From contig JANJGN010000005.1 in assembly GCA_026770705.1 (NCBI GenBank), positions 137,516,001 to 137,580,000 of the forward strand: DNA of 64,000 bases, read 5' to 3'. Both the position numbers and the translations under genes were made by a program. Numbering within the stretch: position 1 is the stretch's first letter; every line of letters starts with the position of its first letter. The stretch is from Isurus oxyrinchus (lineage: Eukaryota). Under the pieces are notes generated by a model. It was not told where the DNA came from. It searched no databases and saw only the letters and a program-made list of their open reading frames with translations. Below, in pieces: positions 1,326-49,783 of this stretch.

Positions 1326-1326
1326 T

Positions 1327-2160
1327 TATAGTTGTAGTTTGTTGAGGTTAACAATCCATTCAACAGCTTCAGCTGATGCAGTGTGAATGGTTGTGATGGA
1401 GATCTTAGCAGAAGTTCAGGATATGGGCTTGACTTGAATGATCATAGTCACAATTTGAGTTGTTCCACGTGGCCACATCTTCCTTGGCCCATTCTTAACT
1501 GGTTGAGGGTTGTCTAGATTTCCCATGGAAGGTTGAACCTTGGGACTTTACCACTCGAGTCAGTAACCAGGTTGCATTGGGCGACGTTTGCAATCAACCA
1601 GGAAATGTATCATCAAGATATGGGGCTGTTGTCAGCTTGTAGGGTGTGATGTGTGTTCTAGTAGGGGCTATGGGATTTCAGGTGAGTGTGTGAGGTTTTT
1701 TAAGGTCCTGTGTCGATGGGAGTACTTTGTTAGTTGAGGAGGATGTTTTCCCTGCAGGCATCAGGTGGTTCAACATGATCTAATACAGGAAGCCACTCAA
1801 ACTGTGTTGGTCTCAACATACCAGAAATAATCCTCATGGCTCCTCAGAGGCGGATATCTACCACGTTTGTGTGGCAGCCTCTGAGCCAGGTTGAGCAGCA
1901 GTATTCTGCTGTTAAGGAGATCAAAGCGAGTGAAGCAGTGCATAGTGTTTTGGCTCCGTTGCCAATGGTGGTATCTGCCAGTTTCCATATTAGGTTCACT
2001 CTTGTCTGGACCTTGGCTCCAGTGTTCTGGAGGTATTGCTGGTCGGTCAATGGTTCAGTGATGCCGAGGTATTTTGATGTTGGATTGTGTGTGAGTGATT
2101 GGCTGTAGAACTGGACATTAAGTTCTTCCCTGGCCTTCAATTCCTTCAGGTTGAAGGCTG
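1327..2160 (-). mobile_element. Vingi/Ingi-like (I group) LINE, 3' part
   Basis: KYLGIT...AKVQTRVNLIWKLADTT.GNGAKTLCTASLALISLTAEYCCSTW motif typical of the Vingi post-RT region. C-terminus ...IHTASAEAVEWIVNLNKLQL*. Confidence 0.7.
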
Positions 2161-2162
2161 GA

Positions 2163-5100
2163 ATAATTAGGAGCAGGAGGAGGGCACTCGGCCCCTTGAG
2201 CCGGCTCTGCCTTTCAATAAGATCATGGCTAATCTGAATGTAACCTTAACCCCACATTCCTGCCTACCCCAGATAACCTTCCACCTCCTTGTTAATCAAG
2301 AATCTATCCAGCTCTGCTTTAAAAACATTCAAAGATTCTGCTTCCATTGCCTTTGGAAGAAGACAGTTCCAAAGACTCTCAACCCTCTGAGAGAAAAAAA
2401 TTCTCCTCACCTATGTCTTGAATGAGCGACCCCTTATTTTTAAACACTGACCTCTAGTTCTAGATTCGCCTACAAGAGGAAACTCCTCTCCATATCCACC
2501 CTGTCAGACCACTCGGGATCTTAAGATTTCAGTTAAGTTACCTCTTACTCTTCTAAATTGCAGTGGATGCAAGCCTAACCTGTCCAGCCTTTCCTCATAA
2601 GATAACCTGCCCATTCCTGATATTAGCCTAGTAAGCCTTCTCTGAACTGCTAACGCATTTAAATATGGAGATATTAGCACACTGGAGAGGGATGATGTGT
2701 GTTTAGATACAGAGCCTTTAATTTGGTCTTTTATTATTTTTGTAGCATCGAGCCTTATGTGCTGATTTACTCTTAGAATTGTACTCTCTGCCCCTTCCTG
2801 TTATAATCTGTTTATCATTTCCCATTCTAACACCTTTCTGTCTTGTCTTTTCTTTTTGGTCCTTAAATAAGGAGACCAGTACTGTACACGATACTCCAGG
2901 TATGGTCTTACCAATGTCCAAATACAACTGAAGCATAACCCCCCTACTTTTGTACTCAATTCCCCTCACGATAAATGATAACATTCTATTAGCTTTCCTA
3001 ATTCCCTGCTGTACCCGCATACTAACATTTTGTGATTCATGCACGAGGACACCCAGATCCCTCTGAATCTCAGCTCTGCAATCTCACCATTTGGATAATA
3101 AGCTTTTTTATTCTTCCTGCCAAAATGAATAATTTCACATTTTCCCACATTATACTCCATTTGCCAGGTCTTTGCCCACTCACTTAACCTATCCATGTCA
3201 CTTTGTAGCTTCCTTACATCCTCTTTACAATTTACTTTCCTACCTATCTTTATGTCGTCAGCAAATTTGGCAACCATTCCTTTGGTTCCTTCATCCAAGT
3301 CATTTATGGAAATTGTAAAAAGCTGAGGCCCCAGCACTGATCCCTGTGGCACACCACTCATCACCTGCCAACTAGAAAAAGACCCATTTATGCAATCTCG
3401 CTGTATCCTGTTAGCTAGCCAATCTTCTATCCATGCCAATATGTTACCCCCTACACCATGCGTTTTTATTTTTCGTAATAACCTTTGATGTAGCACATTA
3501 CCAGATGCCTTCTGGAAATCTAAGTACAGTACATCCACTGGTTCATTTATCCACAGCACATGTGACTCCTTCAAAGAACTCCAATAAATTGGTTAAGCAT
3601 GACTTCCCTTTTAGAAAACCATGTTGACTCTGCCTGATTGCTGTGACATTTTCTAAGTGCCCTGTTATAACTTATTTTATAATAGCTTCTAATATTTTTC
3701 CTATGACGGATGTTAGGCTGACTGGTCTGTAGATTCCTGCTTTCTGTGTGTCTCCCTTTTTGGGTAAAGGAGTTACATTTGCTATTTTCCATTCCAATGG
3801 AATCTTCCCTAAATCTAGGGAATTTTGAAAAATTAAAACCAATGCATCAACTATCTCACTAGCCACTTCTTTCAAGACCTTAGGGTGAAGTCCATCCAGA
3901 CCTAGGGATTTGTCAGCCCGCAGGCCCAACAATTTGCTTAATACCACTTCCCTGATTATTGTAATTTTCCCCAAGATCCTCCCTCCTTCCCATTTTACAG
4001 CTATTTCCGGGATATTACTTGTGTCCTCTGTAGTGAAGACTAAAACAAAGTATCTGTTTAACTCATCTATCATCTTCCTACTTTCCATTATCAATTCCCC
4101 AGGCGCACTTTCTATCGGACCAATGCTTACTTTTTAAATTTTCTTATTTAAATATCTATATAAAACTCTTACTATCCATCTTTACGTTACTAGCTAGATT
4201 TCTCTCATACTCTAATTTTTCCCTCAATCTTTTTGTTATCCTTTGCTGTTCCTTACATTCTTTTCAATCTTCTGCCCTGCCACCCGTCTTTGTGTAATTA
4301 TATGCTTTTTCTTTAAGTTTGATACTGTCTTTAACTTCTTTAGTTAACCACAAATGGTGGTCCCTCCCCTTGGAATTTCTCTTCCTCATTGGAATGTATA
4401 TATTCTGCGTATTCTGAAATATCCCTTACGTGTCTGCCACCGAAGCTCTATTGATCTATCCTATATCCTCTTTACTTCAGCTAGCTCTGCTTTCATGCCC
4501 TCATAATTGCTGCTATTTAAGTTTAAAATACTAGTTTTGAATGCACTTGTTTCTCCCTCAAAGTGAATGTAAAATTATGATTGCTGCTACCTTGGGATGC
4601 CTTTGGTATGAGATTATCAATTAACCCGACCTCGTTGCTCAATACCAAGTCTAGTAAAGCCTGCTCTCTGGTTGGCTCCAAAACGTGTTGTTCTAAGAAA
4701 CTATCCCAAAAACATTCTATGAACTCCTCATCTATGCTATCTCTACCCATCTGATTTTTCCAGTCTATATGTAGATTAAAATCCGCCATGATTATTGCTG
4801 TACCTTTATGGCAAGCTCCCATTATCTCTTTTATACCCTGTCCTTCGTGTAGTTACAATTAGGGAGCCTGTACACCTCTCCCACAAGTGACTTCTTGCCG
4901 TTACCATTCCTCATCTCAATCCAAACCGCTTCTACATGCTGGTTTCCTGAACTTAGGTTATACCCCTCTAATGTGTTAACACCATCATTAATTAACAGAA
5001 CCACCCCTCCACCTTTTCCTAACTTCTTGTCCTTCCTAAATGTCAAGTATCCTTCAATATTCAGGTCCCAATCTATGTCATACTGTAGCCATATCTCTGT

Positions 5101-6614: not shown

Positions 6615-7480
6615 CCCATTTCTCACAGTGCTAGATGTTTGGCAAGATGCCTGTGCTGTGGATTTTGGTAAAATGGCTTTGCAAGCCACTTCTTTCCCTG
6701 TGCTTCTATGTTCCTCAGGAATTCTAAGTAAATCCCTTTGACCCATGTTGCTTTGCCTGACTTGGTTGTCAGGGCAGTGTCTGCTTCCTCATAGGTGTAA
6801 GTGCTTGAGAAATCTGTCTGCTGTGGGGCATCCTTGAGAACCTCAGGGCTGTTTTTACTGTCCACTTATCCTCCTGGCTTGAGTGCATGAAGTCAATCTA
6901 CTCTGCTGTTTCCTGCCATCTTATGAGTCACTTCGTCAAGGGACTCAGTGTTATTGCCACATGGGGGTCTTCATTTTCCTGTGGTCTTCCAGGAGCCGTT
7001 CACTTTCCAGGGTCCAGCAGTGGATGAAAGATTTTCTGAAGCCCAGGAAACAAATCTGGTGGCTGCCAGTTTGAGAAGTCGAGTAAAGTAGTTGTGTGTG
7101 TGTGTCTGTGTGTGTGTGTCTGTGTGTGTGTGTCTGTGTGTGTGTGTATGTGTGTGTCTGTCAATGAGTCGGTACCCTGGACAGCTGTACTGGCCCACGA
7201 GGTGCGTTTCTTGCGGGGTGACCTTGGCCACATGCATGTTAGCGTTCTTTTGTGGGTAGCTCACGTTTTGTGTACGATAGGCCTTTAACATCGAGCTAGT
7301 ATATTCCCGTTGCTGGTCCTGTTTCTTGGCTTTGCTGTCCTTGAGAGAATCCATTGTCCAGTGGGTTTTTACTGCTTGGACTGAGAGCCTGGTGACAGGG
7401 TTGCCATCTAGACAGCATTATTTTTGCAGGTTTTCCATTTGGAAAAGTTACTTTAACATGAAGACGATGTGAAGGTTTCT
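6615..7480 (-). mobile_element. Vingi-like LINE, 5' fragments (APE start, pre-RT region)
   Basis: Remnants ..LDVKGLS../..QETH.. (APE) and TTKSGKATWVKGIYLEFLRNI (pre-RT). Same strand as 1327-2160, so probably one element split by insertions. Confidence 0.5.
7093..7160. repeat. (TG)n microsatellite, imperfect
   Basis: Directly visible dinucleotide run. Confidence 0.97.
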
Positions 7481-7494
7481 GCCTTCCTTCTGCA

Positions 7495-8390
7495 GTTTGC
7501 AGAAAATACAAAACATGGCTGTGTGGTTGAGAGTGAGGAAGAAATTGCAGACTGTAGGAAGGTGTCGATGGGCTGATCAGCTTGGCAGAAAAGTGGCAAA
7601 TTGAATTTCATTAAGCAAAGTATGAAATATATAATTGGGGAGGGCAAACAAGGAAAGGCAATAGACAAATTGTAGGATACCGAGAAGGTAAAGGAGCAGA
7701 GTGACCTCGGATTGTATCACCACAGTTCCCTGAAGTTTGCAGGACAGATAGATAAGGTTGTTGAGAAGGCATATGGGATGCTTTCTTTTATTAACTGAGA
7801 CCTAGAATATATGACCAAGGAGCTTATGTGAGAACTCGATAAAATACTAGTGATGCCACAGCTAGAGTACTGCGTACAGTTCTGGGCACATTACTGGAAG
7901 GATGTGATCACACTTGAAAGGTAGAGAGGAAATTTCTGAGGATGTAAGAATGTAAGTAAGAATGGCAAATTTTTGCTATGTGGTAAGATTGGCTAGACTG
8001 GGATTGTTTTCTTTGGAACTGAGGGGAAATCTAATTGGAATGTATAAAAGCATGAGGCATTTAGATTGAGTGGATAAGAAAAAACTATTTCCCTTAATAT
8101 GGAGGTCAATAATCAGGTTTTAAAGTAATTGACAGAAGAATTAGAGGAGAGCTGAGGAGAATTTTTTTTTAGCCAGAGGGTAGTGGGGGCCTGGAACTCT
8201 CTGCCTGTAACTGGAGTAGAGGCAGAAACCCTCATCACACTTAGGAAGAATACTTAGATGTGCATTTTAAGTGCTTGAACCTACATGGCTATGGCCAAGA
8301 ACCGAAAAATGAGATTAGGCTGGATTGCTCTTTTATGGCAAGCATATATACAATGGGCCAGATGGCCTCCTGTGTCATAAATTTTCTAAT
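7495..8390 (+). mobile_element. CR1 LINE 3' fragment
   Basis: KWQIEF, LEYCVQFW and FFSQRVVGAWNSL remnants plus CR1 3' UTR. Confidence 0.85.
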
Positions 8391-8404
8391 TTTTCTCTAT
8401 TTCG

Positions 8405-11180
8405 ATGTTTAATGTTTCAGGTTGATGAGCTTTCATCAGAACTGAAAGAATTTAAAGATGCAGCAGATTTAAGCAAGCACAAAAGCGAGAAACAGGGCGG
8501 GTAGGAAAGTGCAAAAGGGAAGGCTTGTGATATGGTGGTTAAAAACAGGAGAGATTAAATGGCAAAAGGAAGGTGATAAGGTGGTTAAAAAAGCAGGAGA
8601 GATTAAATGGCAAAAGGAATGGTGGTGCAAGACAAAAAGAGGCAGTGGATAGGACAAGTCTAGAGCAGGTGTAAACAGAAATAGTAGAATCATTATCAAC
8701 AGCAGCTGTCTGAGAAAATGGACAGTTATGATCTGAAATTATCGAACTTACTGGAGTCCAGAAGGCTGTAAAGTGCCTAATTCAAAGAGGAGGTGCTGTT
8801 CTTCAAGCTTATGTTGAACTTCATTGGAACCTTGAAGAGACTTGGGTCAGACTGGGAGTGAGGCAGGGAATTAAAATGACAGGTGACTGGAAGCTACAGG
8901 TTATACTTGCAGGCTGCATATAGTTGTACTGCAAAGCCACTGCCACTAAGTCTGCAACACTTCATTCTCAGAACTAATCCTAATATTCTCTTTAAACCTA
9001 CAGACAAGGGTGGCGCTGGTGTTGTTTGCCCAGCTGACCTCTACCTTCCAGAGACTGAACGACGACAACTCTATTACACCTCCTCCTACAGCCTCCTAGA
9101 ATGTGACCCTCCATTGAACATGTCTTCGTTTCCAAGAATCTAACTGACTTAATCTCTGGGGTTCTTTCTCACAGCTTCTAATCTGATAGGTCCCCAACCC
9201 CATGTAGCCTGCTTTTATTCACAAGAGTCACAAACAGGACCACCCTGGGAGGCCTATCATTTCAGCCTGTCCTTGCCATACAGAAAGGACTTCCTCCCAT
9301 CTCCCCTTGTCTAGACGTCTTTCCCACTTATATCTGTACCTCTTGTATTCCTTCCGCCAATTTAAAAGTTTCCTGGATCTAACTATCCTCTTTTCACTAA
9401 CCCTTTCAACACTTCCTTTCCCACCAGAATGGCCTGAAGGCCTTGTGCTTCTTCCACGATCGGAGGTCCAACCAATCCCCATTCACTGCCCTTCCCGCCT
9501 TGCTGAACTTGTCCTTGTATTGAAAGCTTATTCTTTGACTGCACTCACTTCCTCCAAGTAAAGAGTGTTGCTATGGAGAATCACATGGGTCACAGCTATG
9601 TTTGCCTTTTCATGAAATATGTGGAACGTTGTTTGTTCCAATCCTACTTGGGTCCCCTCTCTTCTTTTTTTCAGTACATTAATGCCTGATTATCTCCTGA
9701 TTCTCCTCCATGTTGCTGCTATTCTGCGTTTCCTGCTCCCACCCCAAACTGGAAAGTTTAATCAACTTTGCTTTCAATTTCTACTTTTCCCTTGTCTTCA
9801 CATGAACCATCTCTGACTCTCTCCTTCCCTTACTTTTCAGTCTCCATTTTTGGGGATAATTCATCCACTATAATTACACTGACCCTCATACCTTTCCTAT
9901 ACTGCCCCCCACCCCACTGTTTCCTTCGGTAAAGATTTTATTCTATTCTCCTAGTTCCTCTGTCTCCATTGCATCTGTTCTGATAATGCTACTTTTCATG
10001 CCACTGCTTCTGATATGTTTTCCTTTTGACTTAACTGAGGATTTCCTTTTACATGGTTGACAGGGCCCTCAACTGTGTCCATTCTATTTCCTTAACTTTT
10101 TCTCTCGCCCCTTCCTCTCCCACCCAGGACCACATTAGGATTCCCCTTGTCCTCAACTTCTACCCCACCAGCTTCCAGATTCAACAGATTGTTCTCCATT
10201 AGGAGCAACAGGTTACCACCACCACCAGCATGTTACCACTGGCAAATGTTCCTTCCCCTTTTCAGCATTTCCTCCATGATACTTTGCTCCACTCCTGAAT
10301 CATCCCCAACACCCCCTCCTTTCCCATGGCACCTTCCTGTGCAAGCATGGGAGAACAACACTGCCCTTTCACCTCTTCCTTTCTCACTGTCCAGAGCCTC
10401 AAACATCTTTTCAGATGAATCAGCAATTTACTTGTACTCCTTTCAATTTAATACCCTGTATTTACTGCTCACAATGTGGTCTCCTCCACACCTGGGAAAC
10501 CAAGCACAAATTGGGTGACCACTTTGCCAAACACATCTGTTCAGTCTGCAAGGTAGCCTGGAGTTTCCGGTTGCCTGTTATTTTGATTCCTTGTGCCACT
10601 CCAACCCTGCCCTCTCTATTCATGGCCTCCTAAACTGTTCTAATGAAGCTTAATGTAAGCTCGAGGAACAGCACCTCATCTTTTGAATAGACACTTAAGC
10701 CTTCCAGACTGGACATTGAGTTCAACAATTTTACACCATAAACACTGCCCGAGGATCAGCACCTCATCTTTTGAATAGACACTTAAGCCTTCCAGACTGG
10801 ACATTGAGTTCAACAATTTTACACCATAAACACTGCCCTATTTTTCAGAGAGCAGCTATTGACAATGATACCGCCTGTCCATTTCGACCTCCTCTTGACA
10901 CACCTTTTGTTCCTTTATATGTCCCATTGTTATCTCCTGTGTCTTGCACCATCATCCCTTTGTCATTTAACCTCTCCTGCCTTCCACTCAATCACAGACC
11001 TTCCCTTTTGTTTTTTCCTCCCCTCTTCCCATTACCTGCTTCTCCACTTGCTTAAAACCTGTTACAACTCTTAACATTTTCCAGTTCAGATGAGAGGCCA
11101 TTAACCTGAAAGGTTAACACTTTCTCTCTCCACAAATGCTGCCTGACCTGCTGACTATTTATGGCATTTTCTGTTTTTAT
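8405..11180. mobile_element. Old Penelope-like element (family A): inverted 3' piece (8405-8935, -) plus RT/GIY-YIG body and pLTR (8940-11180, +)
   Basis: KPTDKGGAGVV (PLE RT N-term), GRPIISAC, and QQFTC..NLIPCIYCSQCGLLHTWETKHKLGDHF (GIY-YIG). pLTR motif at both outer ends in inverted orientation. Confidence 0.85.
8407..8443 (-). ncRNA. Minimal type I hammerhead ribozyme-like motif in PLE pLTR (degenerate)
   Basis: Minus strand reads AGTT-CTGATGA-AAGCTCATCAACCT-GAAA-CA-TTA-AAC. The core is intact; the stems are decayed. Confidence 0.5.
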
Positions 11181-11232
11181 TACCCCTGTTTAAAAATGTT
11201 TCACCCAGTGACCCACTGTTGGCTCAAAGCAC

Positions 11233-12088
11233 TGTTATGAGCTTGGTAGAGTCCAGTAACTTTAAAAAAAATTTTGAACTCCCAATTATTGACTGAAATA
11301 ATTATGCCACAAGATTTCACATTTTAAACAAAATATTTTACTCTCCAAGAGTTAAAGTACTACTAACCTAACACTATATTTCTTGAATACTTATACTTCA
11401 CACCTGAAAACCTCAACTGACCACTCCTCATTCTACTTTTATTTCTACCCAAGAGTTTCCCTATACTTACAGGATCGACCTTGAGGGTTCCTTCACTTCT
11501 CCTGGGATCAAACCAAGGTGTGCCGCAACTCTCAAGGAATCACTTTGATTCTCCTCAGTGTCCCTGCCATTCTCTGAGGTATGAGATTTCTTCAGGTCCT
11601 TCCACTAACATCTGGCTAGGCGAACTGTCCAACTGTCCTTCAAAACCTCACAATTATGGACTCTCCAGCTCAGGCATGGACCTCACTGCATTCCTACCTA
11701 GTGACTTCAAATCAAATACCCCTGGTTTCTGATAGCCCTCTGTTCCTAGCACCACGCTTTATAGCTCCTGGCAGATTCCCAAACCTTCCCTTTGTTCTGG
11801 GAAGCTATTTGAAGAACTTAAACTCCTTATTGAGGCAGCTGTAAACATCCCATCTCCATCAAGAAGCTCAGAGAGGTAATCCATTGTTTTGTTTCCAATA
11901 ATTCCCACTATGATCTTTATAAAATAAGCATAGGCCACCCTTTGATTTGCAACCACTCTAGGTCTGTTTACTAGCTCAAACCTTCTCAAACCAGGTGTTT
12001 TCATTTAGCTTACATTTTAAAAATTTCAATTCCCAAACTAAAAGTTAGACTCTTAAAACATGAATCATAAAATGAGATATTTGTAACA
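11233..12088. mobile_element. Possible solo LTR
   Basis: TGTTATGA...TTGTAACA inverted termini with near-duplicated flanks gcac/gaac. No coding sequence. Confidence 0.35.
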
Positions 12089-12628
12089 GAACTCCATTTG
12101 GAAAGTTCTTTTAAGGAACCTAAATGTCACTTTCAAATGATGTACTAAGTGGAAAGAATGACTTTCAAATGCAGCCAATTCCTATTTAGTGAGAGATCCA
12201 ACAATCCACACCCCTGGTTTGTACCCCACTCTCTGGATAGAACTCAATTGCTTTAGATGTGCAGCAATTAACTGTTGAGGCCTTTGTGAACCTTTTGCTG
12301 CGGCCAGTTAGAAGATGTGGGTCACAGATTTTTTAAGCCCCACAAACGCACGCACACATAGCCAGGGGCTGCTTGATGACATAATATTCTTCACCAGGCT
12401 ATTGAACGGTTAGAACACTTGGATATAAATACAATTGCAATTTTTTAAAAAACTAAGCTATTTGTTCATGAAGGAAGTCATTGCCAAGACCAAGCTTTTT
12501 CTCACCTGATATCTGTCCTTGGACTCTTGCCAACAAAGACCATTGGATACTGTTCAGGTGAAAGCACTAGCTAATTTTATCCTATTCCTTGCCTTGGAGA
12601 GCTGAGGCTCCAACTACAGCCATAGTTG

Positions 12629-13341
12629 GGCTTGGCCTAAATAGCCAAGTGGTTATGATACTGGGTTTGTAACCCCAAGAGCAAGAGTTCAAATCTCACA
12701 ATGGCAAACTATGAAACAATATAACTTCATCTGAAACAGATGGCAACGGGTTTGTACTCGAAAGAGTATCAAGAGTTCAAATCTCACAATGGCAAACTAT
12801 GAAACAATGTAACTTCATCTGAAACAGATGGAAATGGGTTTGTACTCAAAAGAGTTACATTGATTGAGCAACTCGCTTGGCCTAAATAGCCAAGTGGTTA
12901 TGGTACTGGGTTTGTAACCCCAAGATCAAGAGTTCAAATCTCACAATGGCAAACAATGTAACTTCATCTGAAACAGATGGAAATGGGTTTGTGCTCGAAA
13001 GAGTATCAAGAGTTCAAATCTCACAATGGCGAAACAATGTAATTTCATCTGAAACAGATGGAAACGGGTTTGTACTCGAAAGAGTTACAGCCATAGTTGG
13101 GCTTGGCCTAAATAGCCAAGTGGTTATGGTACTGGGTTTGTAACCCCAAGATCAAGAGTTCAAATCTCACAATGGCAAACTATGAAACAATGTAACTTCA
13201 TCTGAAACAGATGAGGAAAATCCCAGTGCTGGAAAGCTTTGGGAACCAAAATCATGAGTTCAAATCTCACAATGGCAAACTACGAAACAATGTAACTTCA
13301 TCTGAAACAGATAGAAACGGGTTTGTACTCAAAAGAGTTAC
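12629..13341 (+). mobile_element. Tandem array 1 of tRNA-Thr-headed SINE-like element (3 heads, about 6 body modules)
   Basis: Head GCCTAAATAGCCAAGTGGTTATGGTACTGGGTTTGTAACCCCAAGATCAAGAGTTCAAATCTC contains an A box, a TGT anticodon loop and a B box. An ~88 bp module is repeated. tacagccatagttg occurs at 12615-12628, 13086-13099 and 13339-13352. Confidence 0.85.
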
Positions 13342-13799
13342 AGCCATAGTTGAAGAAATTGGGACAGATTGAGAATTGAGTTTAGAACCTTCTGAACTTG
13401 ATGCTTGTTTCTCTGAATCGTGATTTTTCAGTTTTACATTGCACTTTTATATTGAAATATTTGGCAGAGACTTGGTTTTCTTCCTGCAGCTTGCTTTTCA
13501 TTTCAATATATTTTCATTTGGCTATGGTTAAGTTAAAATTGAAATGATTGAACAAGCATAGTAACTTATTCTGAACCTGTGCGCTTCATTGTATCTGTGT
13601 CTCCTATTTAATCCTTATGTGATCAATCAGTTTAATGGCATATCTAATTTTGGTTGCTACTCTGTCTCAAGTTCATCAGCAACCAGCACCTCTTACCAAT
13701 GTCTCAACTTTTGTACTATTGTATTGCATCCAATAATGTGAGCACCTTGGCACAACTCTATGCCCTTGCTATTGAAGACAGCAAAGCCATTGTGTAATT

Positions 13800-14780
13800 A
13801 TTCTTTGTCTGCTGCATCCCTCTTGTTGGTATCCTTCCATCTATGAGAGATGATGGACATGCAGCAAACAATCCACTTAAGGTGGGGGTCATTATTTGGT
13901 GTACCTTTGCTGATGGCTGTGAACAGGCAGGTTCTGCTGCAAGTGCCTCACATGAAACTGCTACCTGAAATTATGGGTTGTTTTCAGTGTTGGTACCTGT
14001 TGCCAAGCTGCTGTAGCTACTGGTTGTCATGGTAGTGCATACCAGCACTAGAGGTGTTGCCACTTTCCTCTTTTGCTAGTTAATGACTCCCAGGTGCAGC
14101 AGTCAGTGTTTTTAGGGTCTACGTGTCACGCTTGCAAGCATCCTTGAAGTGGAGCCTTGGGCGTCCCACTGGTCATCTGGCTGTGGCTAAATCACCATAC
14201 CGAGGTCCTTGGGCATGCTGTTGTCTTCCATCCTGCAGATGTGCCTGAACCACCAAAACTGCCTCAGACAGTGCCAACACACTTGGGAACTCTGCCTTTG
14301 AGAGGAATGCCTCATTCATGATTTTGTCCTGCCAGGATATATCCATGCTGTGCCACAGACAGTGAGGATGGAAATTATCGAGCCTCTCCTGGTGACTGCA
14401 AGTCACCCGTGTTTCTCAACCATACATCAAAGCCTTATAAATCATCAGCTTGATCCTAAGGGTCAACTTGATGTCATCCCATGCGTGTTTTGACAGTCAG
14501 TCAAAGGTGTTGGTGCTTTTCTTGTGCACATTTTGAGCTGCTTTGTATCAAGGGACATATTATCTATCATTGTGGACTCAAAGTAGCAGAATTTGCTAAC
14601 CACTTCCTGTGGGCTGTTGTTGAGTGTGATCAGGGCCAGAGTTGCAGCACTTTGACCCTCTTGACGCTTGCAGTCAGGAGGAATAAGTTATAGGCGATTA
14701 GTACAACATTGCCGGTGCTGAGGAGTTCCCTAATCAGGGGGTTGATGTGATTTTGTTTTTGCTTTCTGTGTTAATAGATT
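13800..14780 (-). mobile_element. RTE-clade LINE 3' fragment
   Basis: RLDNFHPHCLWHSMDISWQDKIMNEAFLSKA and downstream RPVGRPRLHFKDACKRD motifs typical of RTE ORF ends. Confidence 0.8.
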
Positions 14781-15879
14781 TTGCACCTTCCTGAGCTGTA
14801 TATAATCTTTGTGATTGGGGAAACTCAATTGCTTAATTAACAGTTACCAAAGAATTTGACACTTAGCAGAAACTGTATGTACAAAAGTTGAGCAGATGCT
14901 TTCAACCTCAACGGTGATCTTCAGCATGGGCCTTCTGCTTTCTTCTGTGTTTCTCAAATTGAATAAATTGTCCTTGATTCCCAACATAGCAATTTATTTT
15001 CCCATCAATTTTCTCTCCTCATTTCTCCTAAAAGCATTTGTTGTCCATATATATACTGCCAGAACAGGTTATTGGAGTGAAGATACTTTCTTTTCTCTTA
15101 ACTAGCTGAAGTCAGTTTTAGCATCCCTGCTAATTATTGGCTCTGTAGTGTTAAAAAGAATAAAAATGTAATTCTACAATAATAGTCCTTTGATTATGTT
15201 AAAATTCAATTTGGATGTTTTAATTTTTATCCTGTTCCAGGTTATTTCCTTCTCATTTAGAAGGTATTTTACATTCACTTTGTGGCCTGTAAGAGGAAAG
15301 ATGCTCCAATAATTGAAGATGTTAAGTTTCCTATAGATACCAAGAGAAATACTAGTGCAAATAGGGAAAGGAAACATAGAATTATTGATTTGAGATAGCA
15401 AGACAGTGAAACAATGCTTGATGTACATGATAACCCGGATTTTCAGTAGAGAAGCTCACCCTGATTTCAAAGAAAGCTGTCCAGAAAATCTAGTATTTCT
15501 GCAGTGTGGTTTTCCCTTCTCCTGATGGCAGTTTAAATCAAATGCCAAATCAAGGCAATGCCTTGACATGCAGCAGCAGTAATGTCAATAAATAGGTAAG
15601 GAACCAATCACATTGAAGCGTTGGTACTTGCTAAGTCTTCCATGAGAGAATCTTCACAGGAGATGCACAACCAATGCAGTCGATGATCACGTTAATTAAA
15701 AAAAAGTTCCAACAGATTTTCCTTAAATGGAGGGCATAGAAATTAAGGTTTGTGGGAGCTTGTTCTAGTCCCTTAATTGTTGCTGGAAGGGTTGGGGAGG
15801 GGGGGAAAGGAGTTCACAAAGGAAGCATGTTGGAAGCATTGAAGCAAAGGAAGCATTGCAAAATTGGAGCTGTTGGTTG

Positions 15880-18700
15880 TGATCTTTTCATGCTCTATTT
15901 TATAGAGGCATGTCAATCTTTGGGCCTTGCTTCAGTTCTGGAGATTATGCCAACTTAGAGACATGATCAACTGGGAGACACTGGTATCTCGCGAGTAATT
16001 GTAACAAAGTGAGCTGTCCGGTGTCAAACTTTCTCAAGGAGGGTAATGTTTTTAGCAATGTATGGGTCCCAAGTGTCTGTGCTATAATCAAGGTGTGGTC
16101 TGATGGTATTTGGTACAGCATTTCCTTCATTGCAGTTGGAATGATGGAAGTTCCATTTCACAAACCAAGCACCTTGAAAGCTGCTTGTTGACTTTCTACT
16201 TCCCACTTAATTATTTTGGATGTGGATCCCTAAGTAACAGCATTTTTTAGTAATTTCAAAGGGGAATCATGCATTGTGCAGTTGGGTACTGATGGTCATT
16301 GAGTATTTCTGATTTGTATGATGTTGCATTTTTCTGTGTTGAATTTCATTCCTCATATATTGGCCCATTTGATGAGATTATTTATATCTTCCTAGAGGCT
16401 AACCTCATCTGCTCTGTAGATTAGGCAGCAATTTGCTGTCTGGACTGGCTTGATATTCCACCCTGGATATAATTTATAAAGAGGAGGAACCAATGTGGTC
16501 CCAGGACAGACTAGGGGTCACTGTTTAAAAATAAGGGGTCGCCCACTTAAGACAGAGATGAGAATTTTTTTCTGAGGGCTGTGAGCCTTTGGAAATCTTC
16601 CTCAAAGGGCTGTGGAAGCAGAATCTTTGACTGTTTTTAAGGCAGAGCTAAATAGATTCTTGATGAGCAAGGGGAAGAAAGGTTATTGAGGATAGGCTGG
16701 AATGTGGAGCTGAGGTTATAATCAGATTAGCCATGATCTTATTGGGTAGTGGAGTATGTTCAAGGGACCAAGGAGCCTATTCCTACTCCTAATTCGTATG
16801 TTCCAGCTTGCGGCTTCCTCATTCTTTGTTACTATTTGGTAAGAAATGTTCTTGTCCGTTGCTTAGTATTTCTTCAGACTCCATAATGATCTAGTTTGTC
16901 CAGTAGCTTTGTGTGTGGTACATGGTCGACAGCTTTGGTAAAATCTAAAATAGCTAGATCTATGGTGATGTGATTGTCAAGGTCAAATTATGGATAGTAA
17001 GGATGAGTTGTGATTCTGTTGATCTTGTTTTATGAAAGTCATGGCAATCATCAATAAGAATATTCTGCCCTTCAAGTTGTCTCATTAGCTATCAATGAGG
17101 TGTTCTAGTAATTTATATCAAACACTAAACGAAATAGATCGGTACTTTGATGGATCGGTAGGCAGTTCTTGTAAATTGGAGAGATGTTAGCCCTTAGCCA
17201 ATCAACAGGTAGTTCTCCTATGTTTATGGATTATTGAAAAATGTACTGTAACATTGGTACAAACTCACTTGCTGCATTTTTAAGTGCGTGTTTTGGAATG
17301 TCATCAAGATCACAAGCTTTAGATGGCCCAATGTTATGTAGGAGTTTCTCAACACCTTTTGTTGTCATTATAACGTCAAGTATGTTCTTGTCAGGCTGCC
17401 TTCCCACTACAGATCTGTACTTAGGTGCTTAATTCCTTCCTTGAAGACGCTCTGAAACTGTGAGCTTAGAGCTTCAGCTTTTTCTTTTGCCATTCAGTGG
17501 TAATTTGTCCTCCACTTGCAGAATTGGGATTCCAGTATTATCCTTTCTTTCTGATTTAATATACCTCCCAAATTTTCTGGGGCTTTCTGTCCTGGCCAAT
17601 TCCATTTTGTATTTATGCTTGGTACGTCGAATCTCCCTGTTGACCACAGTTTGGTGCTGTTCAAATTTAATCCAGAGTTCCTCTTTCTTTGAAAGATCAT
17701 CACTTCACCTAGAATGTTTTACACAGGTGTATGTAGTTTCTCCTTTTTGCAGACTTTTCTTTTTGAGAGAGCCTGTAAGCCATGAGTACTCCCCTTTCCA
17801 GAGTAGATTTTGTGAGGAACGTGTGGATTTATAAGGTCATTTGCACATTTGACAAACACCTGCCAGTTGCTTGTCCACTGAGTTGGTCTCTGGAGAGTTG
17901 TTGAGACTTTTTTGTCATCTGTGCAGCTTGGCTCGTAAAGACATCAATAGTGATACAGTTTCACTGCGGCACTTTGCTTAGTGATTTTCGGTGCAATTGT
18001 GCCTTTAGGCAATACTCACTCAATACTGTTGAATGATCACTTAGCCAAGAATGGGGCCTGATGGATTCCATCAAAGCAGCATGTGTAACAAGATGATGAT
18101 GATCCGATATATTCTCTGTTCCATTTGATGCTTCCTAGTGGTAACGTTCCCCACCTGTGTTAACAAGTGGCCATTCCCTATATTTATGAACTTTTCCTGA
18201 AGTGGTTTGTTGCACATTGGGGGACGTCCTAATTCCAAGGAAGATCGGGGACATTAAAGTACCCACTTAATATGATGGAGGGTGACAATGTTGTATTGTA
18301 AAGTGTTGTTAGGCTTGCATCTAGGCCACTTAATGAATCCTTAGAGCTGCTGGGTCTCTAATAACAAATTCCGACAAAAATAATTCCCCTCTGCAGGGTC
18401 AGTTGACAGCATACCAATTCCGCATCTGTTGAGGACAAAACATGTCTTGAGAAACTGGGAATTGAGTTATTGACTGCAATAAAGACTCATTCGCCTTTAG
18501 TAGATCTATACTTACGATATACTGTGAAACCTTCAGGAAATATTGCTGTAGTGTGAATATTTCCATTATGTTTGGATTTAGTTCCTATGATAACATCAAG
18601 TTTTTCTTGGCTGATAAGTAACTCCAATTGATTTACTTTCCCTTGAATACCGTTGCAATTTATATTTCCAATCCCAATAGAGTTTAGCTTAGAAGGATGT
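15880..18700 (-). mobile_element. Degenerate CR1/L2-group LINE ORF2 (APE-RT), with a nested CR1 3' end (+) at about 16511-16803
   Basis: INCNGIQGK (APE start), LDFTKAVDHV, VLGPHWFLLFINY and IRPHLDYSTDTWDPYIAKNITLLEKV remnants. Confidence 0.75.
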
Positions 18701-21334: not shown

Positions 21335-21565
21335 CCTACACTGCAGCAGTGACTACACCTCATAAGTATTTAATTGGCTGTGAAGCACTTTGAGATGTCC
21401 AGTAGTCATGAAAAACACCATACAGATGCAAGTCTTTTGATGAGTCATATGGACTCGAAACATTAACTGTATTCCTCTCCACAGATGCTGTCAGACGTGC
21501 TGAGTTTTTCCAGCTATTTTTGTTTTTGTTTCAGATTTCCAGCATCCGCAGTATTTTGCTTTTAT
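21335..21565 (+). mobile_element. Deu-SINE (SacSINE1-like) 3' tail followed by a PLE family A pLTR fragment
   Basis: cagtgactacac...attggctgtgaagcactttg...gatgcaagtc tail, then gagtcatatggactcgaaacattaac...acagatgctg pLTR. Confidence 0.6.
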
Positions 21566-21589
21566 CTTTTTGTTTTGTGTAGTTCACCT

Positions 21590-24332: not shown

Positions 24333-25971
24333 GCCTAGATTTTGCGGTCAGTGGAAACTTAACATCACTCGCTGTTCATTATGTTTGCAGCTACCCACAG
24401 AATTTGATATCTTTTGCATGACAATTTACAGTAATTAGAGATTTATTTCAGTGAAGTGCCCTCGGAGAGAGATCTGGAGCAATGTGAAAAGGGCAAGAGT
24501 GAAGAATATTACTGAGGTACATTTAGATAAATCAATTATAGGTCATAAGTCATCCTAAACTCTGTCTGGAGAAGACCCTTTTAACTAATGTTTGTATGAG
24601 ACTTTAATCAATTGCCAATCAGGATTCTTGGTTAGAAACTTTGGAAAGTTTGAGAGAAAATGAAATTAGTAAAATTATACTTAATAGAAATTTCTTAGCG
24701 ACTTTACTGCTCTAGGCAATTGCACACAAGGTAGAGCACAGGCCACAGATGTAATGTATACCCTCCCAGAACCCTCTTGATTTGTTCTTGAAAATACTTG
24801 TGGAGAAATTCTTATTCGGTTGAATCTCTACTCTTGAGACCACATCATCTGTTGTGATTTGCTACCTCTGGGGTCTGTGATTGTGTATACACAACAAGGC
24901 TCTGAAGAAGAGTAATACACACTGAAAACGTTAACTCTGTCTCTCCACAGATGCTGCCTAACCTGAGTTTTTCCTGTTTTTATTTCAGATTTCAACATCT
25001 GCAGTATTTTATTTTTATTATAAGACTTAATGAAACTCTCTTTTTAACCCCTTCCTGACTGTAACACCACCTTGCAATCAGACTCAAGCTGGCCTGGTAA
25101 TTGGCTGTGACTGTTGCTAGCCTAAATTAATTGTTTAATTGTTTCTTTAATTGTGATTTCCACTTGATAAGACATCTGTGTAACAGGTAACTATTCTTGC
25201 AGTACAAGACCTTATTCACTCTCTGATGTGATATTCATTCCCACTGATACATTTTGATAAGGTGGCTGTATCAAGACTTTCAGTCTCAGATTTCCCAAAG
25301 GGTCACTGGAGGCCTTCGTCTCACTGTTAACCCTGTGGTTTCATTGCAATACATGTTACATTGATTGTTTCGAACTTTTATGCTATTAAAACTAACTAAT
25401 GCTGTAGTTTAATACATGCATAACTCAGTCAAGATTTTGGGGTAAATAGATTTATTTTGATAACTCACTGCTTTAGTTAAGAACTAATTCTAACCATCCC
25501 AAAACTACTTACAACACAGAATCTAAAGCAGGAAGTGTAAGTTAGAATATTTACTTAAATGTGAAATCATACACAAAGTGAAATGAAAAGTGGGAAAGGA
25601 AACTGTGATTGAGAGAGAAAATTAAAGTTTAAAAAAAATTTCTAAATGCAAGTAATAATTGAAATCTGAAGCAATGAGACTCCACGTTTGTTAAAGTAAA
25701 TTTTCAGTGCCAGAGAGACTGTTTGATTCTAATTAAGAGTTATCACTCTGTTATGCATTCACATGTACTGGAAAGGACAAGCCCTAACATTTTGTGGTGT
25801 GAATAGTGGTAAGTACCACAACTTTTATGACCTTCATGTGTTTTAATGCTAAATTTCTTGGCGAGTTGGTGGAGCAGGGAAAATTGTACAGCAGCTTTTC
25901 TGATTTCCATCTTTAAACATGCTGAGGCTGTCCGATTTAAAATTTAATAATCTTATTGCAAAATCCAGGCC
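24333..25971. mobile_element. Non-autonomous DNA-transposon-like element with terminal inverted repeats (TIRs), containing a PLE pLTR at about 24900-25020
   Basis: Termini gcctagattttgc and gcaaaatccaggcc are near reverse complements. No ORF. Confidence 0.35.
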
Positions 25972-28620: not shown

Positions 28621-28818
28621 TAACAAATTCATGGTAACACGATTAATACCATCGCGGGTTTCAATTTGAGGAGTTCATAAAGTACATATGTTAAACTTCA
28701 GAAAAAACCTGGTGGTGAAGTACTGGAGCTAATCTTTACATGATTTTGTTTACAGAAATACACAGTACAAGCATGCACCCCCTAACTGAACCACCACAGT
28801 TACAGTCTGTTACTATTT

Positions 28819-30073
28819 GTAACTTTTTCGAGTACAAGCATGTTTCCATCTGTTTCAGATGAAGTCACATTGTTTCATAGTTTGCCATTGTGAGATTTGA
28901 ACTCTTGATCTTGGGGTTACAAGCCCAGTACCATAACCACTTGGCTATTTAGGCCAAGCCTGTTACTACTTGTAACTCTTTTGAGTACAAACCCGTTTCC
29001 ATCTGTTTCAGATGAAGTTACATTGTTTCATAGTTTGCCATTGTGAGATTTGAACTCTTGGTCTTGGGGTTACAAGCCCAGTACCATAACCACTTGGCTA
29101 TTTAGGCCAAGCCTGTTATTATTTGTAACTCTTTCGAGTACAAACCCGTTTCCATCTGTTTCAGATTAAGTTACTTTGTTTTCATAGTTTGTCATTGTGA
29201 GATTTAAACTCTTGATAATCTTTTAAAATTAAAACCAATTAAACCAAATCAACAAAATTGGGATAAATCAGGCACAGCCCCTAATTCAGGTCAGCTGTAA
29301 AACCAAGGACAAAATTTAAAGGAACCATAAATATATTTCCATCTGTTCCTACTCAGATGAAGTTACATTGTTTGCCATTGTGAGATTTGAACTCTTGATG
29401 GTTTTCACTGAGAACACAACAAGTGACAAACAAGTTCCCTGCTAGAAGTAACTCTTTCGAGTACAAACCCGTTTCCATCTGTTTCAGATGAAGTTACATT
29501 GTTTTCATAGTTTGCCATTGTGAGATTTGAACTCTTGATACTCTTTCAAGCACAAACCCGTTTCCATCTGTTTCAGATGAAGTTACATTGTTTCATAGTT
29601 TGCCATTGTGAGATTTGAACTCTTGATACTCTTTCGAGCACAAACCCGTTTCCATCTGTTTCAGATGAAGTTACATTGTTTCATAGTTTTGCCATTGTGA
29701 GATTTGAACTCTTGATCTTGGGGTTACAAACCCAGTACCATGACCACTTGACTATTTAGGCCAAGCCTGTTACTATTTGTAACTCTTTTGAGAAACAACT
29801 ACATAGACCAGCAGGTCCCAGAAGCAACTCAAGGACTATGCTGAGTAACTCTTTCGACTACAAACCCATTTCCATCTGTTTCAGATGAAGTTACATTGTT
29901 TCATAGTTTTGCCATTGTGAGATTTGAACTCTTGATACTCTTTTGAGCACAAACCCATTTCCATCTGTTTCAGATGAAGTTACCTTGTTTCATAGTTTGC
30001 CATTGTGAGATTTGAACTCTCGATCTTGGGGTTACAAACCCAGTACCATAACCACTTGGCTATTTAGGCCAAG
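28819..30073 (-). mobile_element. Tandem array 2 of tRNA-Thr-headed SINE-like element (4 heads, about 10 whole or partial modules, unique inserts)
   Basis: Reverse complement of array 1 units. The 12-mer ctgttactattt (or a one-base variant) occurs at 28807, 28960, 29113 and 29767. Unique inserts at 29217-29335, 29400-29447 and 29793-29844. Confidence 0.85.
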
Positions 30074-30749
30074 TGTTTTAAACCATAGGCTACAGCGAGA
30101 AGAAGCACAAGTAAATCTCCTGTTAATGCATACCACATGTATATAATTAAATCTAGTTAATAAACAACTAACTTGGGGGATATGATTTACCAACAAGCTT
30201 AATCAGCATAAGAACAAAGTAGCTGATCACTGTATCTCTGCTTTTGCTTGATAATATAACAGATTCAATGATCAGCCTTAACAAAAAGCTTAGCAAGTTT
30301 ATGTTTAAAATTTGTATACACTGTACAACTAGTCTATCTCTAGCTTCAAATATTGTGGCTGTTATAAATTATAGGTAGAGACATACAATCATTTTGATCC
30401 TAGCGGCAACTGTGGTAGCATTGATGATCCTAATTTTACTCTGAAATATGCCATGTTCCTCCATTGTGATGTACTTTACAAGCTTACTTCTGATTAACTT
30501 CCTTCGCTTTCTACCTTTCCGTTTTACTCTGTTGTAACCTAGACAACCCACTTCCTAAGCTCTTTAAAACTTCTTTGTGATGTTAGTTGTAACATGTTGT
30601 CCTTGACAAAAGCCTGCAAATAATGCCTCAGAGTATTAAGTCTCCTGCAATTGATGTTCATGGCACTACTTGATACAACATAGCTAGTCATTTAAGTAGC
30701 TGATCTGTGAAATACTAGACAGTTGAACAAAACCCACTATTATGCTAAA

Positions 30750-38174: not shown

Positions 38175-38213
38175 AGTTGACGTTTCGAGTCCTCATGACC
38201 CTTCGACAGAACT
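38175..38213 (-). ncRNA. Minimal hammerhead-like motif with variant core CUGUCGA (PLE family A)
   Basis: Minus strand AGTT-CTGTCGA-A-GGGTC-ATGAG-GACTC-GAAA-CG-TC-AACT: stem I AGTT/AACT, stem II, palindromic ACGT and a GUC triplet. Confidence 0.7.
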
Positions 38214-40632: not shown

Positions 40633-40670
<38 letters not shown>

Positions 40671-40739
40671 ATCTCTCCGCCCACCACACACACACCCTAA
40701 ACCAGCTTATATTTCAACTTTTTCTTGGACTCGAACTCA

Positions 40740-40778
40740 AGTTCTGTCGAAGGGTCATGAGGATTCGAAATGTCAACT
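40740..40778 (+). ncRNA. Minimal hammerhead-like motif (PLE family A), sense to the host pre-mRNA
   Basis: AGTT-CTGTCGA-AGGGTCATGAGGATTC-GAAA-TGTC-AACT. Confidence 0.6.
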
Positions 40779-49612: not shown

Positions 49613-49783
49613 NNNNNNNNNNNNNNNNNNNNNNNNNNNNNNNNNNNNNNNNNNNNNNNNNNNNNNNNNNNNNNNNNNNNNNNNNNNNNNNNNNNNNNNN
49701 NNNNNNNNNNNNNNNNNNNNNNNNNNNNNNNNNNNNNNNNNNNNNNNNNNNNNNNNNNNNNNNNNNNNNNNNNNNNNNNNNNN
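49613..49783. other. Assembly gap (171 N)
   Basis: Run of N in the last intron of the BEND5-like gene. Confidence 1.

What the first reader, a model, noticed from the sequence alone, without database searches (positions are those of the whole stretch)
12615..13352. tRNA-Thr-headed, tail-less small element concatenated in tandem with its target site reiterated inside the array
Seen: each unit is a ~50 bp tRNA 5' half (A box TAGCCAAGTGG, anticodon loop TTGTAA) plus two copies of an ~88 bp module. The module starts at the B box and the unit ends sharply at GAGTTAC, with no poly(A) or microsatellite tail. The 14-mer tacagccatagttg flanks the array on both sides and also lies between units 2 and 3. 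A different 16 bp spacer (12859-12874) separates units 1 and 2, and a 37 bp foreign piece (13214-13250) interrupts unit 3. Known: LINE-dependent SINEs normally end in a LINE-derived tail and insert as monomers. Inference: this is a Pol III RNA mobilised by a template-jumping reverse transcriptase that copies several RNAs per event or re-targets the same site. Its 11-14 bp duplication matches the Penelope TSDs in this window, so it could be a PLE-dependent SINE or retrozyme-like family.
Basis: partly seen in the sequence, partly recalled or inferred. Interest (0 to 1): 0.82.

Follow-up and report, generated by a model that had tools for sequence, protein, structure and literature searches.

The report
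Three-copy tRNA-Thr SINE array insertion
This is a young 724-base insertion made of three copies of a very abundant, tail-less, tRNA-Thr-derived short jumping element, and the target sequence repeated inside it suggests that the element chooses or re-uses its landing site by sequence.

Summary
Window 12615-13352 carries three head-to-tail copies of a non-coding element with a tRNA-Thr(UGU)-like head. The exact 14-mer TACAGCCATAGTTG lies on both sides and between units 2 and 3, and a different 16-nt spacer lies between units 1 and 2.

- **Head:** it is a complete 72-nt tRNA-like sequence, not a 5' half.
- **Insertion:** in 2 of 2 DNA runs laid of a related organism B, one contig joins 12614 directly to 13339. 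That is an exact empty site with a single 14-mer.
- **Family:** it is hugely multicopy in both organisms. Its ends are sharp, (G)GCTTGGCC...GAGTTAC(A), and its flanks are diverse.
- **Spacers:** the 16-nt spacer, and apparently the 12-nt one, recur elsewhere in both organisms, so composites seem to propagate as wholes.
- **Ribozymes and Penelope:** no hammerhead or other ribozyme was found, and nothing is shared with the Penelope copies in the window. The retrozyme and Penelope reading is not supported.

Best reading: a new stringent-type SINE moved by target-primed reverse transcription, with sequence-directed re-use of one site. Tx1-mobilised SINEU-3 in crocodilians shows the same pattern (PMC4494074). 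The partner LINE is not in this window. The scan has noted this family many times on other DNA of this genome.

The parts
12615..12628 (+). 5' copy of the 14-bp target-site duplication TACAGCCATAGTTG
   Evidence: Exact 14-mer. It is the only copy in the empty site of organism B (records 17 and 24).
12629..12858 (+). Unit 1: (G)GCTTGG leader, tRNA-Thr-like head, then two 88-90-nt modules. The first ends in ..GAGTAT and the second in ..GAGTTAC.
12635..12706 (+). tRNA-like head of unit 1 (full model length, 15.3 bits)
12859..12874 (+). 16-nt spacer ATTGATTGAGCAACTC. Read as a fossil flank carried in with a pre-formed dimer.
   Evidence: table 3, place 12864. Contigs span the spacer at summed depth 1733 in X1, against 39 for single-copy flank. 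Most carry C at this place. They are also present in organism B (X6, X7).
12875..13088 (+). Unit 2: head plus two 81-83-nt modules of the deletion subtype
12880..12951 (+). tRNA-like head of unit 2 (23.7 bits)
13086..13099 (+). Internal copy of the 14-mer. Its first three letters, TAC, are also the last three of unit 2.
13100..13341 (+). Unit 3: head, then a first module cut after CAGATG (13213), a 40-nt odd piece, and a second module from 13254
13106..13177 (+). tRNA-like head of unit 3 (23.7 bits)
13214..13253 (+). Odd 40-nt piece. It has no other copy in the window and may be a decayed head.
   Evidence: no other hit in the window. (gapped local alignment to the head).
13339..13352 (+). 3' copy of the 14-bp target-site duplication
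28807..30085 (-). Second, older array of the same family. It has four heads and nine B-box modules, the 12-mer AAATAGTAACAG four times (two copies mutated), and interposed pieces of 66, 50 and 120 nt.

Best explanation
The region is a 724-bp insertion built from three copies of an abundant non-coding SINE.

Anatomy (shown):
- A unit opens with a short leader, (G)GCTTG, followed by a complete 72-nt tRNA-Thr(UGU)-like head. The head carries an A box (TAGCCAAGTGG) and a B box (GAGTTCAAATC).
- The body is one to three copies of an 81-90-nt module that restarts in the T arm.
- The unit ends in a small GAAA-capped stem-loop, GTACTC-GAAA-GAGT(T)AC, with no A-tail or microsatellite.

Mechanism (inferred from standard SINE biology):
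- Pol III transcribes the unit from the internal promoter.
- An endonuclease-bearing LINE of the 'stringent' kind recognises the 3' stem-loop and copies the RNA into a staggered nick by target-primed reverse transcription. This leaves the 14-bp duplication.
- A unit contains no run of four T, so neighbouring copies can be transcribed together and copied as one piece. The short flank between them then becomes an inherited spacer. This explains the 16-nt spacer.
- The target 14-mer between units 2 and 3 means that the site was hit more than once, or was chosen by its sequence. This is sequence-directed re-targeting, as described for Tx1-mobilised SINEU-3 in crocodilians.
- The likeliest partner is a Tx1-clade LINE and not Penelope. 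This rests on the literature parallel and on unchecked earlier notes of this scan. No such LINE is in this window.
For: - **Insertion.** Organism B contigs (X6 record 17, X7 record 24) run 12100-12614 and continue without a break at 13339-13855, in 2 of 2 organism-B DNA runs laid. Organism A contigs (X1 records 1 and 8) cross both filled junctions with 0 other letters.
- **Family size.** 25,987 contigs of X1 were laid on the stretch. Summed depth reaches 10^5-10^6 over the units, against about 39 on the flanks.
- **Sharp family ends with diverse flanks.** Loose ends lie behind 12859 and 13089 and before 13100/13101, with agreement 0.33-0.5.
- **Head.** The tRNA model matches full length in 7 of 7 heads of the two arrays, at 15.3-30 bits. 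Only one reaches the gathering score.
- **No Pol III terminator.** Array 1 has no T>=4 on the sense strand. The first such run is at 13424.
- **Units are not local duplicates.** U1, U2 and U3 differ pairwise by 8-19 mismatches and 12-35 gap columns. The flanks differ from organism B by only 13-14 of 1032 letters.
- **The multi-module body is inherited.** Four of 5 internal modules read GTGCT(C/T); the fifth, A1U1m1, reads GTACTC. All 5 end in GAGTAT. Seven of 8 terminal modules read GTACTC, and all 8 end in G(A/T)... GAGTTAC or AAGTTAC, in both arrays.
- **The spacer is multicopy.** See place 12864 in table 3.
- **Structure.** The 3' domain folds better than shuffles, z = -3.45, with 0 of 200 shuffles as good.
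[quoted passage not shown] Tx1 families share their heads with SINEU (PMC4494074; passages and section 16 read).
Against: - **Partner LINE not shown.** No LINE in the window shares the tail. All 10 of 10 matches of the 23-nt tail lie in the two arrays. The only LINE with RT and endonuclease remains here has a different tail.
- **Specificity is not strict.** Genome-wide flanks are diverse, so strict site specificity cannot be the general rule.
- **The 12-nt spacer may predate this insertion.** Contigs of organism B, which lacks this array, span unit-AGCCATAGTTGG-unit junctions at depth 779-3038. They carry single-letter variants at 13095-13099. This fits a pre-formed composite landing here in one event better than two hits at this locus.
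- **The interior of the array is not verified.** Only short contigs were on hand, and the filled junctions come from what may be the assembly's own sample.
- **Transcription is not shown.** The one 'RNA?' run is a guess and gives contigs only.
Confidence: 0.6

Rival explanations
1. Single event with flank-guided homing. A long read-through transcript of an older multi-unit source (U1-16 nt-U2-12 nt-U3-12 nt...) was copied once. The spacer sequence after unit 3 in the RNA paired with a chance genomic copy of the same 14-mer at the nick. A spacer further upstream in the cDNA may have paired at the other side. The 'TSD' is then the landing homology, not a sign of repeated hits.
For: - The 12-nt spacer junction, with variants, appears in organism B, which lacks this array, and the 16-nt spacer is clearly multicopy (table 3).
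- The left junction (..GTTG-G-GCTTGG) is identical to the internal junction, while the right one continues with the target's own A.
- The duplication is exactly as long as the shared homology.
- Array 1 has no internal Pol III terminator.
- Recalled, not checked here: read-through target sequence is known to position reverse transcription in site-specific APE LINEs such as R1 and SART1.
Against: - No source array was seen.
- The depth argument rests on summed contig depths and short alignments, part of which chance extension could produce.
- This model pushes the origin of the reiterated spacer back to another locus.
- No experiment shows such pairing for this family.
Confidence: 0.22
2. DNA-level origin. 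One inserted unit was multiplied locally by unequal crossing-over or replication slippage between its two TSD copies. Alternatively, the array was pasted in by segmental duplication.
For: - Exchange between flanking TSD copies would give unit-TSD-unit.
- In the older array 2, units U4 and U5 are each other's closest relatives (134 of 141 letters, shared GGGCTTG variant) and could be such a duplicate.
Against: - In array 1 the three units belong to different subtypes: 88-nt modules, 81-nt modules, and an interrupted unit. Their spacers also differ.
- The locus is absent from organism B, whose flanks differ by only about 1.3%, so there was no time for such divergence.
- The flanks are single copy at 90% likeness and unrepeated in the window.
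Confidence: 0.07
3. A Penelope-dependent SINE or retrozyme-like element. Rolling-circle or template-jumping reverse transcription of a small, possibly circular, RNA by a Penelope RT produces the tandem copies.
For: - Penelope copies lie in the same window (38119-40834).
- Penelope elements and non-LTR retrozymes occur as tandem repeats, with TSDs larger than 4 bp (PMC7229834, passages read).
Against: - No hammerhead or other ribozyme family at E<=10, and no CUGANGA core on either strand.
- No sequence shared with the Penelope copies.
- The units are heterogeneous and separated by different spacers, unlike rolling-circle products.
- A non-LTR retrozyme is defined by a type I hammerhead in all its repeats (bioRxiv 10.64898/2026.07.22.740005, passage read).
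Confidence: 0.04
4. Assembly artefact. The interior of the array is a collapsed or mis-joined stack of dispersed SINE copies.
For: The family is extremely abundant, and only 31-mer-based contigs were available. None spans the array.
Against: - Both junctions are supported by contigs of organism A with 0 other letters.
- The empty-site contigs define exactly the 724 bases that the assembly adds.
- Contigs span the 16-nt and 12-nt spacers.
Confidence: 0.03

Closest known systems
SINEU-3 / Tx1-Mar system of crocodilians (Kojima 2015, PMC4494074; passages and section 16 read)
   Same: - A short non-coding retroposon without an A-tail.
- A long TSD (16 bp there, 14 bp here).
- Tandem copies sandwiching a TSD, explained there by sequential insertion at a preferred target.
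- There, the Tx1 LINE and the SINE share the same small-RNA-derived head.
   Different: - The head here is tRNA-Thr-like, not U1/U2 snRNA-like.
- No repeated target element is evident: the flanks are single copy and genome-wide flanks are diverse.
- The body is a 1-3-fold reiterated module.
- Spacers seem to be inherited with composites.
- The partner LINE was not seen here.
Classical tRNA-derived, LINE-tail ('stringent') SINEs of cartilaginous fishes listed in PMC3747384 (table read: HE1/HER1, SacSINE1/CR1-like, SINE2-1_CM/CR1-2_CM)
   Same: A tRNA-derived head with A and B boxes, no poly(A), dispersed high copy number and TSDs.
   Different: - No consensus of those families was on hand, so identity with one of them cannot be excluded.
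- The tail here has no likeness to the CR1-like LINE tails present in the window.
- None of those entries lists a Tx1 partner or tandem arrays.
Metazoan non-LTR retrozymes (PMC7229834; bioRxiv 10.64898/2026.07.22.740005; passages read)
   Same: Small AT-rich non-coding units in head-to-tail arrays, flanked by a TSD longer than 4 bp.
   Different: - No hammerhead in any unit.
- Units are heterogeneous and separated by spacers.
- The head is a Pol III tRNA-like promoter.
Alu insertions next to or in the A-tails of older Alus, and dimeric SINEs (recalled, from no call)
   Same: The 3' end of a resident SINE recreates a site that the partner endonuclease likes. Head-to-tail pairs then form and can later move as one.
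   Different: Here there is no A-tail. The reiterated sequence is a unique 14-mer.

Membership tests
tRNA-derived SINE | 5' head derived from a tRNA, with internal A and B boxes | tested here: met
   The Rfam tRNA model matches over its full length in 7 of 7 heads at 15.3-30 bits; 1 of 7 reaches the gathering score of 29. The anticodon loop is UUUGUAA. ARAGORN calls none, as expected for a decayed acceptor stem.
tRNA-derived SINE | Short, non-coding, dispersed in high copy number, flanked by target-site duplications, with empty sites in relatives | tested here: met
   Units are 141-241 nt. 25,987 contigs were laid in X1 with diverse flanks. There is a 14-bp TSD and an exact empty site in 2 of 2 organism-B DNA runs laid.
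tRNA-derived SINE | 3' tail shared with a partner LINE | not testable with these tools
   No LINE in the 64-kb window carries the tail. Other parts of the genome could not be read. Earlier scan notes claim a Tx1 LINE with the same stem-loop (s1-897463), which was not checked.
Tx1-mobilised SINE (SINEU-like) | Tandem copies sandwiching a TSD | tested here: met
   The 14-mer lies between units 2 and 3 and on both flanks. The 12-mer appears four times in array 2.
Tx1-mobilised SINE (SINEU-like) | Target preference shared with a Tx1 LINE family | not tested
   There is no Tx1 LINE in the window. Post hoc, ATAGT lies within the first 12 nt of 3 of 5 distinct 3' flanks, which hints at a preference. 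Genome-wide flank consensus is weak.
SINEU proper | U1 or U2 snRNA-derived head | tested here: not met
   The head is tRNA-like. No snRNA family matched.
Non-LTR retrozyme | Type I hammerhead ribozyme in every tandem repeat | tested here: not met
   No hammerhead or other ribozyme at E<=10 in either array. There are 0 CUGANGA motifs on either strand.
Non-LTR retrozyme | Unit-length circular RNA | not testable with these tools
   Only contigs of a run guessed to be RNA were available.
Penelope-dependent non-autonomous element | Sequence shared with a Penelope element (pseudo-LTR or hammerhead region, or 3' end) | tested here: not met
   blastn of the whole array against the window (word 7, E<=1e-3) hits only the two arrays. 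Only the Penelope copies in this window were tested.

The most novel reading that the evidence does not exclude
The short flank that a read-through Pol III transcript carries behind each unit acts as a heritable guide. It pairs with the nicked target and steers the next insertion to genomic sites with the same 11-14 letters, including its own array. Lineages of the SINE would then each have their own spacer/target sequence, and arrays would grow with the target reiterated between unlike units.
Probability: 0.2. Interest if true: 0.75.

Novelty: new member of a known kind. Interest (0 to 1): 0.45.

Why it matters
This is a very abundant SINE family of a cartilaginous fish, recently active or still active. 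I found no description of it in 3 full-text searches. It comes with a clean filled/empty pair that proves mobility.

Its arrays give a natural record of how a tail-less SINE picks its landing site, and of how neighbouring copies and their flanks fuse into new composite elements. If the spacer-equals-target pattern holds genome-wide, it would make testable whether target choice lies in the partner's endonuclease or in the RNA itself.

For annotation, it warns that these 'repeat-spacer' arrays are retroposon composites. They are not satellites, retrozymes or CRISPR-like arrays.

Tried and rejected
- **Ribozyme or retrozyme.** Rfam at E<=10 on both arrays, plus a motif scan, found nothing.
- **Real tRNA gene.** ARAGORN finds none. 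Only 1 of 7 heads reaches Rfam's gathering score.
- **Partner LINE in the window.**
  - I scanned 10 of the 33 ORFs of 95 aa or more, choosing the longest and those in repeats. This gave one RVT_1 fragment (2966-3574, minus) and one weak endonuclease hit below Pfam's cut-off (51897-52265, plus).
  - The 3' ends of that LINE family (..CCTAATTCGTATRTTC) are unlike the SINE tail.
  - No Tx1 LINE was recognised, but 23 ORFs were not scanned.
- **Target as part of an older repeat.** The flanks have no other copy in the window and single-copy depth at 90% likeness.
- **Interposed pieces of both arrays.** They have no other copy in the window. The last 24 nt of the 120-nt piece resemble a loose-end consensus that recurs in all four runs. 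Its nature (LINE tail or variant head) stays open.
- **More copies from public collections.** Two scans of metagenome contigs and one of prokaryotic genome contigs found nothing. This was expected for vertebrate DNA.
- **The search of earlier findings by sequence.** It was blank.
- **Known shark SINEs.** Repbase and Dfam are not among the tools, and the supplements of the papers were not opened.
- **Depth figures.** The figures are sums of contig depths. I used them only as 'far above single copy', not as copy numbers.
Full report
**What is there**

Window 12615-13352 reads as follows:

- 14-mer TACAGCCATAGTTG
- G + unit 1
- 16-nt spacer ATTGATTGAGCAACTC
- unit 2
- the same 14-mer (its TAC is also the end of unit 2)
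- G + unit 3
- the same 14-mer

The 14-mer is exact at three places. A search allowing two mismatches finds only one more, at 27010-27023, against 0.56 expected by chance. TRF reports period 88 x 2.0 copies and period 81 x 2.0 copies. Each unit ends in GAGTTAC without an A-run or microsatellite.

The head is a whole tRNA-like sequence. Rfam's tRNA model aligns over all 71 positions at 12635-12706, 12880-12951 and 13106-13177, at 15.3, 23.7 and 23.7 bits. All are below the gathering score of 29. The anticodon loop UUUGUAA gives UGU, which is Thr. ARAGORN calls nothing.

**A second array**

blastn of the array against the window (word 7, E<=1e-3) hits only itself and 28818-30073 on the minus strand. 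That array has these features:

- It has four heads and nine B-box modules.
- Units carry one, two or three modules.
- Its own 12-mer AAATAGTAACAG follows a unit end four times (two copies are mutated). These are 4 of the 7 matches found at up to 1 mismatch in the window.
- Pieces of 66, 50 and 120 nt lie between parts of units, and none has another copy in the window.
- One head there reaches Rfam's gathering score, at 30 bits.

Both loci of the family in this window are therefore multi-unit (2 of 2).

**Family structure**

An alignment of the 15 modules shows two types that hold across both arrays.

- Internal modules end in GAGTAT. Four of 5 read GTGCT(C/T) just before it.
- Terminal modules end in GAGTTAC or AAGTTAC. 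Seven of 8 read GTACTC.

The multi-module body is therefore an inherited feature of subfamilies, not something made anew in each copy. A plain tandem duplication of the 88-nt segment ATCAAGAG...GAGT accounts for the junction.

The last 59 nt fold into a hairpin CAUCUG-AAA-CAGAUG and a terminal GAAA-capped stem. The z-score is -3.45, and 0 of 200 shuffles fold as well. In the longer folds the B box pairs with GGGUUUGUACUC.

**It is an insertion**

The look-up of sequencing runs lists four runs of organism A, all one sample, that hold 0.85-0.92 of the words. It also lists ten runs of organism B, from six samples, that hold 0.63-0.64. I laid one run of A (X1), two DNA runs of B (X6, X7) and one run of B guessed to be RNA (X15) at 90% likeness.

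- In both B DNA runs a single contig runs 12100-12614 and goes on without a break at 13339-13855 (record 17: letters 85-599, then 600-1116; record 24 likewise). This is the empty site with one 14-mer.
- In A, contigs cross both filled junctions with 0 other letters (records 1 and 8).
- The flanks of B differ from the window at 11 of 515 letters upstream and 2-3 of 517 letters downstream.

The three units differ from each other by 8-19 mismatches and 12-35 gap columns. That is far more than could arise since the insertion, so they came in as different copies. The A run may be the assembly's own sample, and nothing spans the interior of the array.

**The family at large**

- 25,987 contigs of X1 lie on the stretch, 13,283 of X6 and 26,898 of X7. 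Summed depths are 10^5-10^6 over the units, against 32-42 on the flanks.
- Loose ends pile up behind 12859 and 13089 and before 13100 and 13101. Their consensus agreement is only 0.33-0.5. Copies elsewhere therefore end at ..GAGTTAC(A) and begin at (G)GCTTGG, with unrelated, AT-rich flanks.
- This confirms the sharp, tail-less 3' end. It also shows that the 12-16-nt spacers are not part of the element.
- Some junctions do recur:
  - At 12864, inside the 16-nt spacer, contigs that reach at least 16 letters to either side sum to depth 1733 in X1. Four contigs with C account for 1629 of it. Such contigs are present in both B runs.
  - Across 13095-13099, inside the 12-nt spacer, spanning contigs sum to 6,716-15,258 in X1 and 779-3,038 in X6. 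They carry single-letter variants in 2-14 contigs each, and no listed difference at 13090-13094.
  - A further junction, ..TTTCATTTA before 12761, recurs with agreement 0.83-0.97 in all four runs. It matches the end of the 120-nt piece of array 2.
- I read this as composites being copied as wholes, spacers included. Part of the 12-nt signal could be chance extension of alignments.

**How it most likely works**

Shown so far:

- a tRNA-like head with A and B boxes
- no run of four T on the sense strand of array 1, the first being at 13424
- a structured 3' end without a tail
- a 14-bp TSD and an exact empty site

Inferred:

- Pol III transcribes the unit.
- A stringent-type LINE with an endonuclease recognises the stem-loop and performs target-primed reverse transcription.
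- Read-through across neighbouring copies lets dimers and trimers move together with the flank between them.

The reiterated 14-mer calls for sequence-directed choice or re-use of the site. Two routes fit.

- **(a) Sequential insertions into the regenerated target.** This is what Kojima describes for Tx1-mobilised SINEU-3. Tandem copies sandwich a 16-bp TSD, and Tx1 families share heads with the SINEs (PMC4494074; passages and section 16 read).
- **(b) One insertion of a pre-formed composite.** Its trailing spacer pairs with a chance copy of the same 14-mer.

Route (a) has the precedent. Route (b) fits the recurrence of the 12-nt spacer in organism B better. Post hoc, ATAGT lies within the first 12 nt of 3 of 5 distinct 3' flanks in the window (the p-value there is not corrected for having picked the motif). 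This fits either a target preference or descent of the spacers from one another.

**Partner**

- No LINE in the window has the tail. All 10 of 10 matches of the 23-nt tail at up to 3 mismatches lie in the arrays.
- The LINE remains seen here are an RVT_1 fragment and a weak endonuclease hit, from the 10 of 33 ORFs scanned. Their tail is different.
- Earlier first-reader notes of this scan on other pieces of the genome claim a Tx1 LINE that shares the tRNA-Thr head and the 3' stem-loop. One follow-up accepted the shared head but found homing only weakly supported. I could not check these notes and use them only as a lead.

**What it is not**

- There is no hammerhead or other ribozyme family at E<=10 and no CUGANGA core.
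- Nothing is shared with the Penelope copies at 38119-40834.
- Non-LTR retrozymes are defined by a type I hammerhead in all repeats (bioRxiv 10.64898/2026.07.22.740005, passage read; PMC7229834, passages read). Membership therefore fails.

**In print**

- Three full-text searches gave no paper describing a tRNA-Thr SINE with a Tx1 partner in cartilaginous fishes.
- A review table lists HE1/HER1, SacSINE1 and SINE2-1_CM for these fishes (PMC3747384, passages and table read).
Identity with a catalogued family cannot be excluded.
- Supplements were not opened and might bear on the target analyses of PMC4494074.

**Verdict**

The family is a new member of a known kind, with precedent for its most striking feature. 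The Penelope and retrozyme reading is not supported. What remains open, and of real interest, is whether the spacer-equals-target pattern reflects endonuclease specificity or guidance by the RNA's own flank.

Noticed in passing
window 28807-30085 (-): An older array of the same SINE. It has four heads, units of 1-3 modules, the 12-mer AAATAGTAACAG four times, a 14-nt 5'-truncated unit end (CTCAAAAGAGTTAC) just before the first 12-mer, and three interposed pieces of 66, 50 and 120 nt.
   Followed up: partly
window 29215-29334 (-): The 120-nt piece before a B-box module. Its last ~24 nt resemble a loose-end consensus (..TTGATTTGGTTTTCATTTA) that recurs with high agreement in all four runs laid. 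It may be the tail of the partner LINE or a variant head.
   Followed up: partly
window 12680-12770 and every other module: Inside each module the B box (GAGTTCAAATC) is nearly complementary to GGGTTTGTACTC near the module's end, so that a module can fold into one long hairpin.
   Followed up: no
window 2165-4100 (-), 16510-16803 (+), 51897-53949 (+), 36930-37936 (-): Decayed copies of a non-LTR LINE (RVT_1 fragment, weak endonuclease hit). Three 3' ends share the tail ..CCTAATTCGTAT(A/G)TTC, which is unrelated to the SINE tail.
   Followed up: partly
Short relatives lie at 21429-21569, 24907-25018 and 63666-63804.
   Followed up: no
window 13808-13900: Summed contig depth jumps to about 2,900-4,400 in the three DNA runs (X1, X6, X7), so another repeat family begins here.
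   Followed up: no
window 49613-49783: A run of 171 N (assembly gap or masked). It was left alone.
   Followed up: no
window 12100-12557: A 742-letter contig of the run guessed to be RNA (X15, organism B) covers the upstream flank and stops at 12557. The flank may be transcribed, or the run may hold DNA.
   Followed up: no
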